Below, piece by piece: positions 57,392-64,000 of a stretch of 64,000 nucleotides of DNA. The notes beneath the pieces are model-generated. The model was not told the DNA's origin. It was given only the letters and a program-made list of their open reading frames with translations, and made no database searches. Numbering within the stretch: position 1 is the first letter of the stretch; each line of letters opens with the position of its first letter. Position numbers and translations under genes: made by a program. The stretch comes from Magallana gigas. Its lineage: Eukaryota. Location of the stretch: NCBI RefSeq assembly GCF_963853765.1, contig NC_088854.1, positions 11,904,001 through 11,968,000 of the forward strand. Direction: 5' to 3'.

Positions 57392-58270
57392 AGGTTTAAC
57401 AAGCTCAGTGCAAGCACATTGTATCTTACTGCTCAATGTTCAATCTCCCAAGTATATTATTCTCAAAAACAATTCCGACGACCGCCAAAATCAAACTTAT
57501 TATGTTTAGTTTACCCGCCAATTTTATATTCATGGTTCTCAGCCAATGATATTCAGAGTTATAGTTAATCTTATCAGAAGAGAGATGTCAACATTCATTA
57601 CATCATTAACATGCATTCTGTTTACAATTACGACTGTCCACCAACTGCAACATGTGAGGATTTCAGTTTAGTTTGCCCGCCAAAAGCTAACTAATGAATA
57701 TTCACTATCATAATAACCAATCCGCTTCGCTTTCTTGCTATCATCAAAGACCATATGTCATTTCTATAGTCTTTGTCATTTACAGAGAACAAATCATTTT
57801 GGCGCTCAGATCCTTGCAATGTGTTTTTGATTGTTCATTTGTACATAAATGTTTCCTGGCTGAATTGCAAAACAAACAGATGCAATAAAACTCACTGTGT
57901 ATTCTGTAGTTCACTTATATACAGTGTATTCACCATTAAAGATAGCAAAAATTGCAATTTTCTGAGATGTTATATCAGACAGACTGTGAGACTGAAATTT
58001 CCCTCCAAAATATAAATGCTAAAATACTCATAAACTCCATAACTAAACAGATCCTCTGTCATTTGGATATACATGTACCGGTATATGAATTCCAAGAATT
58101 GACAGCAATAACTAAGCATCCCATTATTCAGAAAAAATTTTCAGTGTGATGTGTGATAGGTGATATCCTGTTCTTTGGATATGAACCCCATGAATTGATA
58201 CAAATGTACTACAAACTGATTTGGGATCTATATTTCAGTGTATGTTACAGTTGATTGTCCCTTAGCTTAC

Positions 58271-58453
58271 CTGTCTGGCCTCCACCTCAAAGTTCTGTAG
58301 CTGCACCCCCTGCTCCAGCCTCAGCCTCTTGGACTCGGCAATGGTCTCCAGATCCAGCTCTCGCTCTCTGAGGTACTCCATGAGCGCCTGGATTCTGGAC
58401 TGAGCGTCGTACTGAGGGTCAGCCATCAACTGAATCCCACTTGTTTCAAATAT
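58271..58453 (-). CDS. TRIO: Trio exon, spectrin repeat
   Basis: IFETSGIQLMADPQYDAQSRIQALMEYL...FEVEARQ; gtgtag / gtaagc. Confidence 0.92.
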
Positions 58454-59128
58454 CTACACAGAAAAGAAAAGCTCAACCTGAATTTGGTCTTGAACACAAT
58501 AAAATCCTCTACTATTGTATAATCCTGTTTTACAGATTATCATACAATATGGAAAAATATTCTTTTAGCTTACAAATTCTCTCAGTCTCTACCATATTAT
58601 TCACTATGCATTAAATGGAAATCTTCACATCCATCTCTTTGACAAACAACTGTACGACTAAAAAACTTTGTATATTTAGTAGATATCTTGAGTGATATCA
58701 TAGATGGGTGGGGACCCAAATGCATGGCACTTCCATACAGTACCATTACAATGTAATGCACTAAGTAAGTGGAAGTGTAAACAAAAATCCTACTTGAATT
58801 AAAGCCTAAAGTACTGGCAGTTTACAACATTCATATTTCAAATAATAATAAAAACACAAAGTTGTTAAACTTTTAAATAGAATTTCAAAACCAGTGCGAG
58901 GCCTCTTTTTTGATAAATGTCATGGTAATGATAATATGACCTGAACCTTGATCAAATGATCTCTGATCAGAATAAATGAAATATCCTTTGGTCATGATCA
59001 TGAGCTAAATAAATGTACATAAATTTGAACATTTACATTGGTAGCGAATCATTTTTATAGTCTCTTGGCTATACAGACCCAAAGACCCCTCCCTCAATTT
59101 TATTCCCCTGGTTTTACTCAAATCTTAC

Positions 59129-59290
59129 CTGTATGATATCTTGTCCCCTCTGGAGGACGTCAAATGTACAGTTCTGCATGTGTAGCACACTGTCATTATG
59201 GAGCTGGAGTTGTTGTTCTGACTTAGCTCCGTCGGACATCAAGTCTTGATGTTGAAGCTCCTCCGCCCATAGCTCCAGCTGAGCAGATAC
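59129..59290 (-). CDS. TRIO: Trio exon, spectrin repeat
   Basis: VSAQLELWAEELQHQ...FDVLQRGQDIIQ; gacag / gtaaga. Confidence 0.92.
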
Positions 59291-60055
59291 CTGTCATAGG
59301 ACAAACCAAAAAATGTCACCAAACTTATCTCAAAGATATCTCAAATGTACATTTTCAAAATGTATTTGTTTTGTTTATAATCAGTGTTTAAAGTTTTTGG
59401 TTTCTGCCCTTTCAAATCAATATTCAAATATTATCAAGTTTATAAATAATTCTTTTTGTTCCTCAAAGTTAACTAAAGTCTTCAATAGCTGTTACATATG
59501 ACTATAATAAGAGGACAATCCCGAAATAAATCTGAATTACACAGAATGCCAACTGTTACACACAAAAAGAAAATAATTTGTAGGAAGGGATTAATTACCT
59601 TTTTTTCTCTCAAATAGAAATCTGGCAGTATACCTTATTTTCTATACACAACCAAAAACTATGACAGGTTATAAAACAGTTTAAGTTCCATCTAGCACCA
59701 ACAGAATGGATTTAAATATATAATTTTTTACTCTTTTAAGCTTTGAAGGTGAGGTTTTCACTTAAATTGGGTTCAGTCAGGTAACAATATTTAAATAATA
59801 TTCTTTTTGGCCTAGTGCTTTATGTCAGATGTCCCATCAACACAATAGTGACAGTACAGTTAGACATAGTTATAGTGAAGTGTCAGCCTGGGATGACCAT
59901 ATTTGATTGGTGGAAAAAAGTAATTTATTAAATCCATAAAATTTACAATACATCTTTAAAAGATTTGAGAGAATGAAACCGACATTGCTGTAAGTGTGAA
60001 TTTGTTTTATTTATGTTCTGTATAACCATGTTTTACTGTAAACTTAGCTAAATAC

Positions 60056-60171
60056 CTCCAAAGCATCTCTCTCAAACAGTCTGAGCTGTAGACACAGGTC
60101 CAGCTTCATCTTCCTGTTGGCCCACAGTTCTTCTAGCTGGGTTCTACTGTCATTCAATTGCCTCAGGACAC
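60056..60171 (-). CDS. TRIO: Trio exon, spectrin repeat (phase 1 start)
   Basis: VLRQLNDSRTQLEELWANRKMKLDLCLQLRLFERDALE; ctgtag / gtattt. Confidence 0.93.
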
Positions 60172-62028
60172 CTACAGATTTTATTATACATCAATTTTCA
60201 ATAACAGTATTTTTAAAACTCAGGTGTTGTAACTCAAGTGTACCTTTAGGTGTTAAAATACTAATTGATGGTCTACAAAATCTGATCACCAGGTAATACA
60301 TTTCATCTCCAACCCCACTCCTCCAAAGTATTTTTAATGTTTTGAATTCAAATTTGTTTTTGTTTTACAAAGTTATAACATTGAAACAACACATCACATG
60401 TTGCACTTTTGTAGCAAAAATGAATCAAAGCATGTTGGAGACTGTTTATTAAACAAATCAAGGAACACAAGAAAAATGTTTACACTGACAGCTTGTTTGA
60501 TGCTACTATGATAAAACGCAAAAGGTATGATAGCTAACTCAACAATGCAGAAATCACTACAGATCATTAGTAGGTATGAAAACATATCTTTGAAAAATGA
60601 TATGAATGTTTATTGAAAACGGGAGTTATGAAACTATGTATTAAATGTGTACTCTGAGACAGACAGACAGATACACTGAAATTTATGAATTTGTTTACAA
60701 ATATCTCTAGCTTGAAATGAAGATATGCAGATAAAGACAGATTCTGGAATATAGTAGTTCTGATTGACTCCATGCACCTACAGAATTCCATTAATTTGTC
60801 ACTCATCTATTTATCTCACAGCCACAGAAGCACTTCCTTATCACAAAAGAGAGCATTAAATTCATTAAGGCAGGTCTTAATAACAAAGGCTGTCTGCCAA
60901 AGAAGGTTACATAATACAGAAAGATAATGCCAGTGGGAAATTGTTGAAACAAGATTGGCATGCATGAAATAATTATGTTTTCAAAAAACAAACTCTCTCC
61001 CCCCCCCCCCCCCCCCTCTTTCTCTCATGAATACACTATTAATAATTTTTTTCACTTCTCAATTGTACTCATTAATAATACATGCAGTTTGAAATCTCAG
61101 AAATCTCAGAACATTTATAGATAAGTATGACTCAAAAAGGACAAGGCCTACTTTGAATTATAGATAAATGACTATCACCTTTGTTTATATATGGTTCTCA
61201 ATTATTGATTATCTACCCTTGGGTTGGCCTCTCTAAATCAAATAGAAACACAATACCATTTTCTAGCAGAATGGACTTGCATGGGCATTGATTATCAGTG
61301 CTTTGACCATAAAGATAACCCAGACGGGGACTTCCTATGCCCAGAATACTCTAGATACTATGGGAGAGATCACCACTGATATCTCTTATTGGTTCAAGGG
61401 ACATCTGAAGCCAATCTATATTGAATCAGATACTAGGTTACCAATAATTGGTGATGTAATATTCAAGTTTATTTTGGAAAAGGGCAATTTAAAACACAAC
61501 CAAGAAAAATACCAATCCTGTCCGTTTGAGAAAAAGAAGTGATATGTACATCAATACATGTATTATTTATTAACTTTCTGCTACATTTATATAATTATTC
61601 AATGAAAAGAAATTTGGTAATGGATGTTTCTGATGCAATCTTGAAAGAAACATTACCAAGAAAACAATAACACAGTTCTAGAAAACTTCATTTGAGCTCA
61701 GCATCCAAAGAACATTGTAAACAACAAATGCTTTCACAGAGAAACGATGTGTAAGAAAAGAGGAGTTTTCCTTGCAAGAGAATGATAAGTGCATCTGAAA
61801 GTAATTACACCCCAGACTCAATAAAACAGCAAATTTTGAAAATTAAAACCACAAGGGATCAAACTGAGCCACAAGTACGTGAACAAGAAACCTAAAATAA
61901 ATTGGGTGTGTCCTTGACCTTCTGTTACTTTTGAATTTCTTTATACATGAATAGTGATATGACCTTAACCTTTGGCACTAGAATTTCTGTACATGACCTT
62001 AAATCTTTTGCACTAGAATTTCTGTATA

Positions 62029-62246
62029 CCTTGGAATCATTAAAATTCTCAGGGGCCAATTTTCGTGGATTCCTTAAAATTTACAAGTTTGTGGGGATGT
62101 AATTTTGTCTACTATATTATACCTACAAAAGGAAAAAGACTTTATAGCCCTAAATTATTAATTTGGAGGATGTAAATTCATGGATGAGAGATACCCATGA
62201 ATTCCACAAAAAAATTGAGCCACCACGAAATCTAATGATTCCACAG
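62029..62246. mobile_element. MITE with imperfect TIRs and TA flanks
   Basis: TA|CCTTGGAATCATTA ... TAATGATTCCACAG|TA. Confidence 0.65.
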
Positions 62247-62965
62247 TACCTGAGAAGAGATATGACCTTGACAGTCTGCAAAAGAATTTCCCTCTCAGCT
62301 TATTTACAATTTACATACAGTAGACACAATAAAAGTGAAACACTGTCAGTGAGGAGCATGCAACCACACATGTACTAACACTTGAGAGTGATACATGCAC
62401 TATCTCTTCCAGACATCACTATTTATTTCCTGGTTTTGTCCCACATACTGTGTTTTGGGGCACAGACCATAGACAGGTACAATAACATCTACACTGAATC
62501 TCCTGTCTATAGGTAACACTATCATCAGTGACCAAATGGGCTGGTCACCATGTAATTGGATTTTATAATGACATCCATTAACTTGTCATATAAAAGAGAC
62601 ACCCTACTCTCTTTAATGTTTATCTGACATGATGCTATTTTATAGATTGACAAAAACAACTGTGTTCAACTTGAAAACATACCGAAGTTTTAAGACTAAA
62701 AGTTCATAAACATCTGAAGAAGTTATGGGGGTTGGGGTGAGGGAGGGGGAATGATGGGGAGGAGTGGTTGTTTACATTGATGTGTACTTAACGATTGTGT
62801 GTGTGGAAGGGGGGGGGGGAGAGTGGGTAGGGTACATACAAGGAAATAAAGCAACTATATAACTTAATTCTACAGCAGTGAATCAAAATCACACGTTATA
62901 CTAAAAATTTAGCACAAAACATTATAAAACTATCATAGAACAATATGATATGACATTTAACTTAC

Positions 62966-63356
62966 CTTCAATATGTGTATAATCTGCATTCTGGTTTATC
63001 TTGTCTGGCTCAGCACTGAACACCCTACGAAAAACGTAAACAATAAGTTCCCACAGTTTCATCAGTCTTATCCATAGGAAAAGACACACCACTGCCACAA
63101 ATCGTAGAATTTTTGACACAATGATTAACATCATTAATACAAAGCTCATAATCTGCATCACAATGATGTTAAAATTTTGGTCTGGCATTTTATCAAAGAG
63201 TTTGCTTCGCCACTGGGTGAAATTGACCCTTCTTTGAGAAGGTCCTGGGGTCCAGGAATGTCGCCATGATTCCCTCCAAGAGCGACGCTGTCTTACTGGT
63301 ACACTCTCGGAATCGGACCCCGAGCGCCTTCTCGGGATAGGAATGTTAGATGGCAT
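62966..63356 (-). CDS. TRIO: Candidate alternative first coding exon of Trio encoding a basic N-terminus plus a ~48-aa hydrophobic segment
   Basis: 130-codon ORF after an in-frame stop. It ends at a consensus donor G|GTAAGT in phase 1, matching the phase-1 acceptor of exon 60171. Confidence 0.7.
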
Positions 63357-64000
63357 GATGGAATGTTTATTTTGAAATTTCAGGAAAAGTATTTCACTCT
63401 AATTCCATAGTATTTTTTAAATTCTTGACAAAATGTTCAAGAATTTCAACATTTCTTTATCGGTTGACATTCTGAATTGATTTGAGTTGCAGTAACATCA
63501 TGACAATAAGCTGGTCAACATCATAAGTGATTTTCTAAAATATAAAATTCTCCCCAACTTATTACACAAGTCTGCACAGATGAATGTACTTGTTCCTTCA
63601 TACACCATCGGACACAGAATATTGAGCTGCACTATGACTAATTTCCTTACATGTTTTCCCCACTTGACAAAAACTATGTGATTTCCCCTTTGTGATTACC
63701 ACATGCTTTCACTCAAACACCATCTCACAACCAGTGAGGCAGGAGAAATACACATCCCGGGGTCTCTATCATCTCATAACATGTACACAATAGGCACCAG
63801 GGACAGTTAACCCCGATGAATGGCCAGGCGTAACGACATCTCCTTATTTCTTAAATACTTTCACAGCGATTTCCATCAGACAAACACCTGATAATCCCAC
63901 CAATTTTATCCATATCCTTTATAACAATTAATGGAACGTTGGACTTTCCTCACAACACATCAACGAACCATGTGTCATTTGTAAACAATTCAAACATGGA

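What the first reader, a model, noticed from the sequence alone, without database searches (positions are those of the whole stretch)
62966..63356. Intronic 130-codon exon adding a long hydrophobic anchor in place of Sec14
Seen: MPSNIPIPRRRSGSDSESVPVRQRRSWRESWRHSW (basic, RRxS-rich), then FNIIVMQIMSFVLMMLIIVSKILRFVAVVCLFLWIRLMKLWELIVYVF (~48 aa hydrophobic, punctuated by K/R). It ends at G|GTAAGT in phase 1, exactly fitting exon 60171 (G-VLRQL) and giving a 2379-aa ORF. The ATG has A at -3 and follows an in-frame TAG. Known: delta-Kalirin isoforms start inside the spectrin repeats, but I know of none with an N-terminal membrane segment. Inferred: a signal-anchor or monotopic hairpin (ER/lipid-droplet type) Trio isoform, possibly regulated by PKA.
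Basis: partly seen in the sequence, partly recalled or inferred. Interest (0 to 1): 0.8.

Follow-up and report, generated by a model that had tools for sequence, protein, structure and literature searches.

The report
Hydrophobic alternative N-terminus of oyster Trio
An oyster Trio/Kalirin gene makes a second, shorter protein from a start inside the gene. It swaps the lipid-binding Sec14 head for a conserved, very hydrophobic helix that probably ties this Rho-GTPase activator to a membrane.

Summary
On the minus strand, ATG 63356 opens 130 codons that end at G|GTAAGT (62966). RNA from four runs splices 62966 to 60171.

The last 59 nt (63024-62966) are a constitutive Trio micro-exon. The canonical upstream exon, 5.1 kb away, splices to an AG|G acceptor at 63024. 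So the "intronic exon" is a 5' extension of that micro-exon, and only codons 1-110 are isoform-specific.

Those codons are really coding:
- Three oysters keep 390 nt without indels, with dN/dS 0.14-0.19 (p = 2e-7).
- At least 19 distinct homologous ORFs keep a gap-free 74-residue core.
- Seven related loci keep the same internal acceptor, and six of them a GT donor. Spectrin exons follow the ORF in four loci.
- More distant species carry a 340-440-aa version with further conserved serine/arginine motifs.

The new N-terminus replaces Sec14, spectrin repeats 1-4 and helices A-B of repeat 5. That is the position of the vertebrate delta-Kalirin start.

Residues 62-81 are transmembrane-grade hydrophobic in the 11 homologues scanned. 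Residues 82-114 form an amphipathic helix with a conserved charged stripe. AlphaFold2 gives one 55-residue helix, not a hairpin. Membrane anchoring is likely but inferred. Topology, transcription start and PKA control are open. I rate it a new variant of a known kind.

The parts
63027..63356 (-). Isoform-specific coding part, codons 1-110 (MPSN...VYVFR). It lies in the 5.08-kb intron upstream of the micro-exon.
   Evidence: ORF. An RNA unitig covers 62997-63411 at depth 152 against 336 for the shared exons in X5. dN/dS is 0.14-0.19 with no indels in three oysters.
63174..63356 (-). Residues 1-61: a basic, Ser/Arg-rich segment (net charge +8) with RRRS and RQRRS motifs, predicted disordered.
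   Evidence: Charge count. AlphaFold2 pLDDT is 44-60 here. dN/dS is 0.11-0.21. RRRS is also present in P0002 and P0003.
63114..63173 (-). Residues 62-81: a strongly hydrophobic helix of transmembrane grade.
   Evidence: The best 19-residue window has a Kyte-Doolittle mean of 2.0-2.75 and a negative summed insertion free energy in all 11 homologues scanned. The columns are gap-free in 19 sequences and F72 is invariant.
63015..63113 (-). Residues 82-114: an amphipathic helix with a conserved charged stripe (K/R82, R85, K/R97, E/D103, K/Y107, R111). It runs across the internal acceptor into the micro-exon.
   Evidence: Column table: E/D103 in 19/19, R111 in 19/19, R85 in 18/19. AlphaFold2 places a helix at 60-114 with pLDDT 89-96.
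63025..63026 (-). AG of the internal 3' splice site (tttttcgtAG|G), used by the canonical Sec14-containing transcript.
   Evidence: A loose end at 63026 in X5 and X1 maps to the upstream exon end at extended coordinate 68106. The pyrimidine tract plus AG|G is conserved in the seven related loci examined as well as in the window.
62966..63024 (-). Constitutive 59-nt micro-exon ((R)VFSAEPDKINQNADYTHIE-G). It forms the B-C loop and start of helix C of spectrin repeat 5, and both isoforms share it.
   Evidence: There are zero non-synonymous changes among three oysters.
62964..62965 (-). GT of the donor G|GTAAGT, phase 1.
   Evidence: The joint 62966>60171 is seen in 4 runs. Six of the seven related loci keep a GT donor (GTAAG or GTACG) after a G; L018 reads A|GTAAG.
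63357..64000 (-). Transcribed upstream region, either 5' UTR or upstream start sites. The transcription start is not fixed. This stretch holds 23 upstream ATGs.
   Evidence: X21 polyA reads give depth 1.3-4.3 here against 0 in the other introns, all first mates on +. X13 and X1 contigs run on past 64000. Upstream ATGs are listed.
63570..63760 (-). Non-coding blocks conserved in three oysters; a candidate promoter or regulatory region of the internal start.
   Evidence: Three-way alignment. Long exact blocks persist although dS is about 0.64 between the species.
60056..60171 (-). Next exon (VLRQLNDSRTQLEELWANRKMKLDLCLQLRLFERDALE), which is helix C of spectrin repeat 5.
   Evidence: Joints and translation. 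The homologous exon follows the alternative ORF in L010, L011, L020 and L013.
58269..59290 (-). Two further spectrin exons (59290-59129 and 58453-58269), joined in the same RNA contigs.
   Evidence: Joints 59290>60056 and 58453>59129. The reading frame stays open.

Best explanation
The oyster Trio/Kalirin gene has an internal start of the delta-Kalirin type. Transcription begins in the 5.08-kb intron upstream of a constitutive 59-nt micro-exon and runs through that exon's acceptor. Translation from ATG 63356 gives 110 isoform-specific residues, fused in frame to the rest of Trio from helix C of spectrin repeat 5 onward.

This N-terminus replaces Sec14, spectrin repeats 1-4 and helices A-B of repeat 5. 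It has three parts:
- a basic, Ser/Arg-rich disordered segment;
- a 20-residue hydrophobic helix of transmembrane grade;
- a 33-residue amphipathic helix with a conserved Lys/Arg/Glu stripe.

The most likely function is a membrane anchor that tethers the two GEF domains and the kinase to a membrane, in place of the peripheral lipid binding given by Sec14. Both the N-terminal segment and the Trio body probably stay cytosolic, in a hairpin or a deeply embedded monotopic arrangement.

Shown: transcription, splicing, coding constraint, deep conservation and hydrophobic character. Inferred: membrane insertion, topology, the organelle and kinase control.
For: Splicing and strand:
- The joint 62966>60171 is present in four runs from four studies. 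Stranded polyA reads fit minus-strand RNA.
- The isoform-specific unitig has depth 152 against 336 for shared exons in X5 and 85 against 375 in X13. Other introns are at 0-30.
- No splice joint enters between 63027 and 64000.

Coding constraint:
- Three oysters keep 390 nt with no indels, while flanks of about 650 nt carry 29-43 gap columns.
- Codons 1-110 have dN/dS 0.14-0.19. Oyster against L022 gives 32 synonymous and 28 non-synonymous changes, p = 2e-7. Both the basic and the hydrophobic halves are constrained.

Deep conservation:
- A phmmer search of 1.8 billion proteins finds only ORFs that end ...NQNxDYTHIE(G/S)K, which is the donor read through.
- 19 distinct sequences align without gaps over residues 57-130.
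- The acceptor AG|G is conserved in all seven related loci and a GT donor in six.
- Trio spectrin exons follow the ORF in four loci.
- The long forms (344-437 aa) share further motifs and, in several cases, an MKRR start.

Canonical isoform: it has Sec14 and four spectrin repeats upstream.

Hydrophobicity.

Precedents: delta-Kalirin lacks Sec14 and the first four spectrin repeats (PMC11630257). Alternative first exons change Kalirin's membrane binding (PMC9823006). Solo/Trio8 is a membrane-associated Trio isoform (cited in PMC3547891).
Against: - The transcription start is not mapped. Coverage continues at least 640 nt upstream, and 1.1 kb past the window in X13. That stretch holds 23-46 upstream ATGs, so part of the signal could be retention of this one intron in canonical transcripts.
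- AlphaFold2, run twice, predicts one unbroken helix from 60 to 114 and no hairpin turn at 82-85.
- The second segment carries three conserved charges and is only marginally hydrophobic.
- The flanking charges would favour N-terminus-out, C-terminus-in: acidic residues before the helix, Lys/Arg after it.
- No transmembrane predictor was available and there is no experiment.
- F109 and R111 are also constrained by the overlapping splice acceptor.
- Some reads continue past the donor into the intron (X21 depth 1.5-1.75 at 62401-62800).
Confidence: 0.6

Rival explanations
1. The isoform is real but has a different topology: a single-pass N-out, C-in (type III) anchor. Residues 62-81 cross the membrane. 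The Ser/Arg-rich N-terminal segment is lumenal or extracellular. The amphipathic helix 82-114 lies on the cytosolic face and leads into the spectrin repeats.
For: Acidic residues sit before the helix (E/D58-59) and Lys/Arg after it (82, 85, 97), which fits the positive-inside rule. AlphaFold2 gives one continuous helix without a hairpin turn.
Against: The N-terminal segment has net charge +8 in the oyster and is about 290 residues long in other species. It has no signal peptide. It carries RRS and SP-type motifs, which are typical of cytosolic kinase substrates. The only NxT sequon (N45) is not conserved.
Confidence: 0.12
2. The hydrophobic helix is not a membrane anchor. It packs against helix C of the truncated spectrin repeat 5, or it drives oligomerisation through its 3-4 spaced polar stripe.
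For: It replaces exactly helices A-B of a three-helix repeat. Polar residues recur every 3-4 positions along all of 60-114.
Against: A Kyte-Doolittle mean of 2.0-2.75 over 19 residues, with a nearly all-hydrophobic surface, is far above that of soluble bundle helices. Conserved Trp and Phe and the flanking Lys/Arg are typical of a membrane interface.
Confidence: 0.15
3. The functional product is a stand-alone protein of about 144 aa, made from transcripts that do not splice at 62966 and end in the intron.
For: Reads continue past the donor (X21 depth 1.5-1.75; X5 43 against 152). The unspliced ORF stops 14 codons after the donor.
Against: The read-through tails differ in length (0-39 aa) and sequence between species, while six of the seven related loci keep a GT donor. 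The spliced joint is seen in every run.
Confidence: 0.05
4. There is no function: a chance ORF in a retained intron or an untranslated leader.
For: An open frame of this length is expected 0.41 times per shuffled window. There are many upstream ATGs.
Against: dN/dS is 0.14-0.19 with p = 2e-7 and there are no indels. ORFs are conserved in at least 19 distinct sequences, up to 437 aa long, with shared motifs.
Confidence: 0.03

Closest known systems
Delta-Kalirin (intragenic delta transcription start of vertebrate KALRN)
   Same: An internal start gives proteins that lack Sec14 and the first four spectrin repeats (PMC11630257). One human delta start overlaps an internal exon (deltaEx12), like the exon extension here.
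   Different: I found no report of a long hydrophobic N-terminal peptide on delta-Kalirin. Here 110 to about 330 specific residues are conserved. Homology of the two starts is not shown; only the position matches.
Solo/Trio8 (Trio C), the membrane-associated short Trio isoform of mouse cerebellum
   Same: It is a Trio isoform tied to membranes (early endosomes) through alternative exon use. It is cited in PMC3547891 and PMC8467920 as Sun et al. 2006.
   Different: Solo/Trio8 keeps Sec14, the spectrin repeats and GEF1, and lacks GEF2. The oyster form changes the N-terminus and keeps all catalytic domains.
Kalirin Ex1C front peptide (cKal7)
   Same: An alternative first exon adds a positively charged, hydrophobic amphipathic helix that binds membranes (PMC9823006). 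Residues 82-114 here have that character.
   Different: Ex1C is short, precedes an intact Sec14 domain and binds peripherally. Here Sec14 is absent and a 20-residue transmembrane-grade segment comes first.
Spastin M1 isoform (from my own knowledge, not checked here)
   Same: An alternative start adds an N-terminal hydrophobic hairpin that moves a cytosolic enzyme to the ER or lipid droplets.
   Different: It is an unrelated protein. This is an analogy of mechanism only.

Membership tests
Trio/Kalirin gene (Sec14, spectrin repeats, two GEF units, kinase) | [quoted passage not shown] | tested here: met
   The exon at L003:9492-9647(-) matches the Kalirin Sec14 structure 7UR2 at E = 7.2e-9. Pfam on single exons gave nothing.
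Trio/Kalirin gene (Sec14, spectrin repeats, two GEF units, kinase) | Spectrin repeats, DH-PH units, SH3, Ig/FN3 and kinase downstream | tested here: inconclusive
   Matches to spectrin are weak. Spectrin_6 hits a downstream ORF in L011 and L020. The other domains were only read by eye in the open frames.
Delta-type internal-start isoform | Lacks Sec14 and spectrin repeats 1-4 and joins in frame within or at repeat 5 | tested here: met
   Four helix-C end motifs lie upstream and four downstream of the broken repeat.
Delta-type internal-start isoform | Transcription start inside the intron | tested here: inconclusive
   No joint enters 63027-64000 and coverage there exceeds that of other introns. 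However, no 5' ends were seen and contigs run past the window.
Integral membrane anchor (transmembrane helix or hairpin) | Hydrophobic stretch of 19 or more residues with favourable insertion energy, conserved in orthologues | tested here: met
   The insertion-energy scale values came from memory; the Kyte-Doolittle scale is standard.
Integral membrane anchor (transmembrane helix or hairpin) | Two membrane helices separated by a turn (hairpin) | tested here: not met
   AlphaFold2 gives an unbroken helix 60-114 in both runs. Segment 2 is marginal, with summed energy +0.7 to +6.7.
Integral membrane anchor (transmembrane helix or hairpin) | Carbonate-resistant membrane association with a defined topology | not testable with these tools
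   This needs an experiment.
Solo/Trio8-type anchor | Isoform that retains Sec14, spectrin repeats and GEF1 and lacks GEF2 | tested here: not met
   The change here is N-terminal and removes Sec14.
Kalirin Ex1C-type front peptide | Short amphipathic helix placed directly before the Sec14 domain | tested here: not met
   No Sec14 follows. The peptide joins spectrin repeat 5.

The most novel reading that the evidence does not exclude
An evolutionarily old, integral-membrane form of the dual RhoGEF-kinase Trio. An internal promoter at the delta position supplies a conserved membrane-embedded helix plus a phospho-regulated disordered head, so that Rac/Rho activation is fixed to one membrane. The taxa that carry it are not identified; the homologues are probably other molluscs. 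It would be the first Dbl-family GEF I know of with an N-terminal transmembrane-type anchor, and it may hint at what the poorly understood vertebrate delta isoforms once did.
Probability: 0.5. Interest if true: 0.6.

Novelty: new variant of a known kind. Interest (0 to 1): 0.5.

Why it matters
Where Trio and Kalirin act in the cell is set by their N-termini: the Sec14 domain and the alternative front peptides. A conserved isoform that swaps this peripheral lipid-binding module for an embedded helix would be a different way to localise Rac/Rho activation. It would also give a testable function for an internal start at the delta position. For annotation, it shows that a splice acceptor and its pyrimidine tract can lie inside a conserved coding sequence, so the same bases carry two constraints.

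Tried and rejected
- Pfam on the peptide and on five long-form homologues gave nothing above cut-off.
- The ESM Atlas feature search gave no usable hit.
- Rfam on 61800-64000 found nothing. On L002:1-4400 it gave only a sub-threshold histone stem-loop match.
- A whole-genome search with CRAL_TRIO_2 missed the locus because the domain is split by introns. Pfam on single Sec14 exons failed too. The PDB sequence search settled the point.
- The PDB holds no chain covering the Trio or Kalirin spectrin region for numbering.
- I looked for a remnant of the long-form N-terminal region upstream in the oyster by tblastn and by an HMM, and found none. The oyster form is truly short.
- The loose end at 63541 is not an upstream exon. 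It maps to another chromosome, C8:17919795.
- AlphaFold2 was run twice to look for a hairpin and gave a single helix both times.
- The taxa of the homologous contigs could not be found. No paper names the run or assembly accessions, and no source gives a meaningful name for the proteins.
- The P0040 look-up found no contig.
- I could not test whether public annotation already lists this isoform. The length filter of the protein search excludes 2400-aa proteins, and a spliced protein has no reference to hand in.
- The 2379-aa total was not rebuilt.

Full report
**What is in the sequence**

On the minus strand an ATG at 63356 (atcATGc, A at -3) follows an in-frame TAG at 63401-63399. It opens 130 codons plus one base, ending ATTGAAG|gtaagt at 62966. 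The next exon begins tgtag|GTGTCC at 60171, so the split codon is Gly and the frame continues VLRQLNDS.... The stretch is single-copy in the genome. The window is G000:C2:11904001-11968000 of an oyster genome. ORF length alone is not remarkable: an open frame of 158 or more codons is expected 0.41 times per shuffled window.

**RNA evidence**

I laid three RNA-labelled contig runs and one raw-read polyA run on 58001-64000.
- The joint 62966>60171 appears in all four. The raw reads give 6 reads with 5 different starts.
- The joints 60056>59290 and 59129>58453 are also present.
- All raw-read first mates lie on +. In the usual stranded library that means RNA from the minus strand.

Contigs in two runs carry a 255-nt loose end at 63026. 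It maps 5.08 kb upstream, to the end of a canonical spectrin exon (...GENLLEEI, AAG|gtaaaa; extended coordinate 68104 = C2:11972104).

The last 59 nt, encoding (R)VFSAEPDKINQNADYTHIE-G, are therefore a constitutive micro-exon. The finding is its 5'-extended form, and only codons 1-110 are isoform-specific.

Depth of the isoform-specific unitig (62997-63411) against the shared exons:

| Run | Isoform-specific | Shared exons | Other introns |
|---|---|---|---|
| X5 | 152 | 336 | 0-18 |
| X13 | 85 | 375 | 0-30 |
| X1 | 45 | 260 | similar to the isoform-specific depth, so not informative |
| X21 (polyA raw reads) | about 2-5 | about 7-9 | 0 |

No joint enters 63027-64000.

Coverage continues upstream to the window end, and 1.1 kb beyond in one contig. 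The transcription start is therefore not fixed, and the leader would hold many upstream ATGs. Some reads also run past the donor into the intron.

**Is the specific part coding?**

The evidence says yes.
- A phmmer search of 1.8 billion representative proteins found 11 hits. Apart from one low-complexity match (P0010), they are ORFs that end ...NQNxDYTHIE(G/S)K, which is the same exon end with the donor read through.
- Word-based searches added more, at 82% identity and at 36-46%.
- Three oyster species keep exactly 390 nt without indels. The flanks of about 650 nt carry 29-43 gap columns.
- Nei-Gojobori dN/dS for codons 1-110 is 0.16, 0.19 and 0.14 in the three pairs. The oyster against L022 has 32 synonymous and 28 non-synonymous changes (binomial p = 2e-7).
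- Both the basic half (0.11-0.21) and the hydrophobic half (0.13-0.24) are constrained.
- Nineteen distinct sequences align without a gap over residues 57-130.
- In the seven related loci examined, the Arg111 codon is AGG preceded by a pyrimidine tract, which is the acceptor. In six of them a GT donor (GTAAG or GTACG) follows the exon.
- Trio spectrin exons follow the ORF 1.9-9.5 kb downstream in L010, L011, L020 and the sister oyster L013.

More distant species have a long form of 344-437 aa. It carries further conserved motifs (YRSSWHG, RSxSxGNLQQ, RLKFFKRRSYPVNPSPP, GLKSLFxNIKR, HPIHTFQ, SIFGRSRxKKSVIKEVEENLTHP), and several start MKRR. The oyster has no remnant of that region. The species behind these contigs could not be identified.

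**What it replaces**

A Sec14 exon lies upstream at extended coordinates 83647-83492 and matches the Kalirin Sec14 structure 7UR2 at E = 7e-9. Counting helix-C end motifs gives:
- four complete spectrin repeats upstream;
- a fifth repeat made of the exon 68288-68104 (helices A and B), the micro-exon (B-C loop) and the 60171 exon (helix C);
- four further repeats downstream.

The isoform thus lacks Sec14, repeats 1-4 and helices A-B of repeat 5. This is where vertebrate delta-Kalirin starts (PMC11630257). That paper also reports a delta start overlapping an internal exon.

**The peptide**

- Residues 1-61 are basic (net +8), Ser/Arg-rich and of low AlphaFold2 confidence.
- Residues 58-61 form a conserved acidic cap followed by His-Pro in the long forms.
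- Residues 62-81 are 20 hydrophobic residues. The best 19-residue window has a Kyte-Doolittle mean of 2.0-2.75 and a negative summed insertion energy in all 11 homologues scanned (the energy scale values are from memory).
- Then come K/R82 and R85 (18/19).
- Residues 86-114 are hydrophobic but carry K/R97, E/D103 (19/19), K/Y107 and R111 (19/19).
- Polar positions recur every 3-4 residues from 68 to 114.

AlphaFold2 on two alignments gives one helix from 60 to 114 at pLDDT 89-96, with no turn. F109 and R111 are also fixed by the overlapping acceptor.

**Interpretation**

A translated internal-start Trio isoform is well supported. That its hydrophobic helix anchors the protein in a membrane is the most economical reading, but it remains inferred.

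The GEF domains must face the cytosol, and the N-terminal segment looks cytosolic. I therefore favour a hairpin or a deeply embedded monotopic arrangement. The flanking charges and the unbroken predicted helix keep an N-out single-pass topology alive. A protein-protein role is also not excluded. PKA control rests only on RR(R)S motifs.

**Comparison with what is known**

The nearest known cases are:
- delta-Kalirin, for the position of the start;
- the Kalirin Ex1C amphipathic front peptide (PMC9823006);
- the membrane-associated Solo/Trio8 isoform (cited in PMC3547891 and PMC8467920).

None of them has an N-terminal transmembrane-grade segment. Two literature searches found no such Trio isoform. 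Whether genome annotations already list it could not be tested.

Noticed in passing
window 62211-62248: A 38-nt element (aaaaattgagccaccacgaaatctaatgattccacagt) has RNA depth above 10,000 in the three contig runs. It shows hundreds of loose ends with varied flanks on both sides, so it looks like an abundant dispersed repeat. Rfam gave no match.
   Followed up: partly
L002:1501-2100 (extended coordinates 65501-66100, C2:11969501-11970100): A 600-nt block in the same intron is 97% identical between two oysters, against 82-89% for most of the surrounding non-coding sequence. It has no ORF and no Rfam match. It could be an enhancer or the promoter of the internal start.
   Followed up: partly
window 62401-62900: PolyA reads continue past the donor into the intron at depth 1.5-1.75, while other introns are at 0. 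This may be partial intron retention or an alternative 3' end after the alternative exon.
   Followed up: no
window 63541: Contigs in two runs diverge here into sequence that maps to another chromosome (G000:C8:17919795). This suggests a shared repeat or a chimeric contig rather than an upstream exon.
   Followed up: partly
L005-L007 (extended coordinates about 102000-119000, minus strand): The open frames upstream of Trio look like a seven-helix receptor with a Cys-rich region and a long C-terminal tail, possibly a class C GPCR-like neighbour gene. This was read by eye only.
   Followed up: no
window 148-831 (+): A long open frame (276 codons stop to stop, reaching the window start; 227 aa from the listed GTG start), beyond the 3' end of Trio. 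It is probably the end of a neighbouring gene and was not examined.
   Followed up: no
Open frames that read from an exon into T-rich intron here are hydrophobic, as T-rich sequence tends to be when translated. This was not tested.
   Followed up: no
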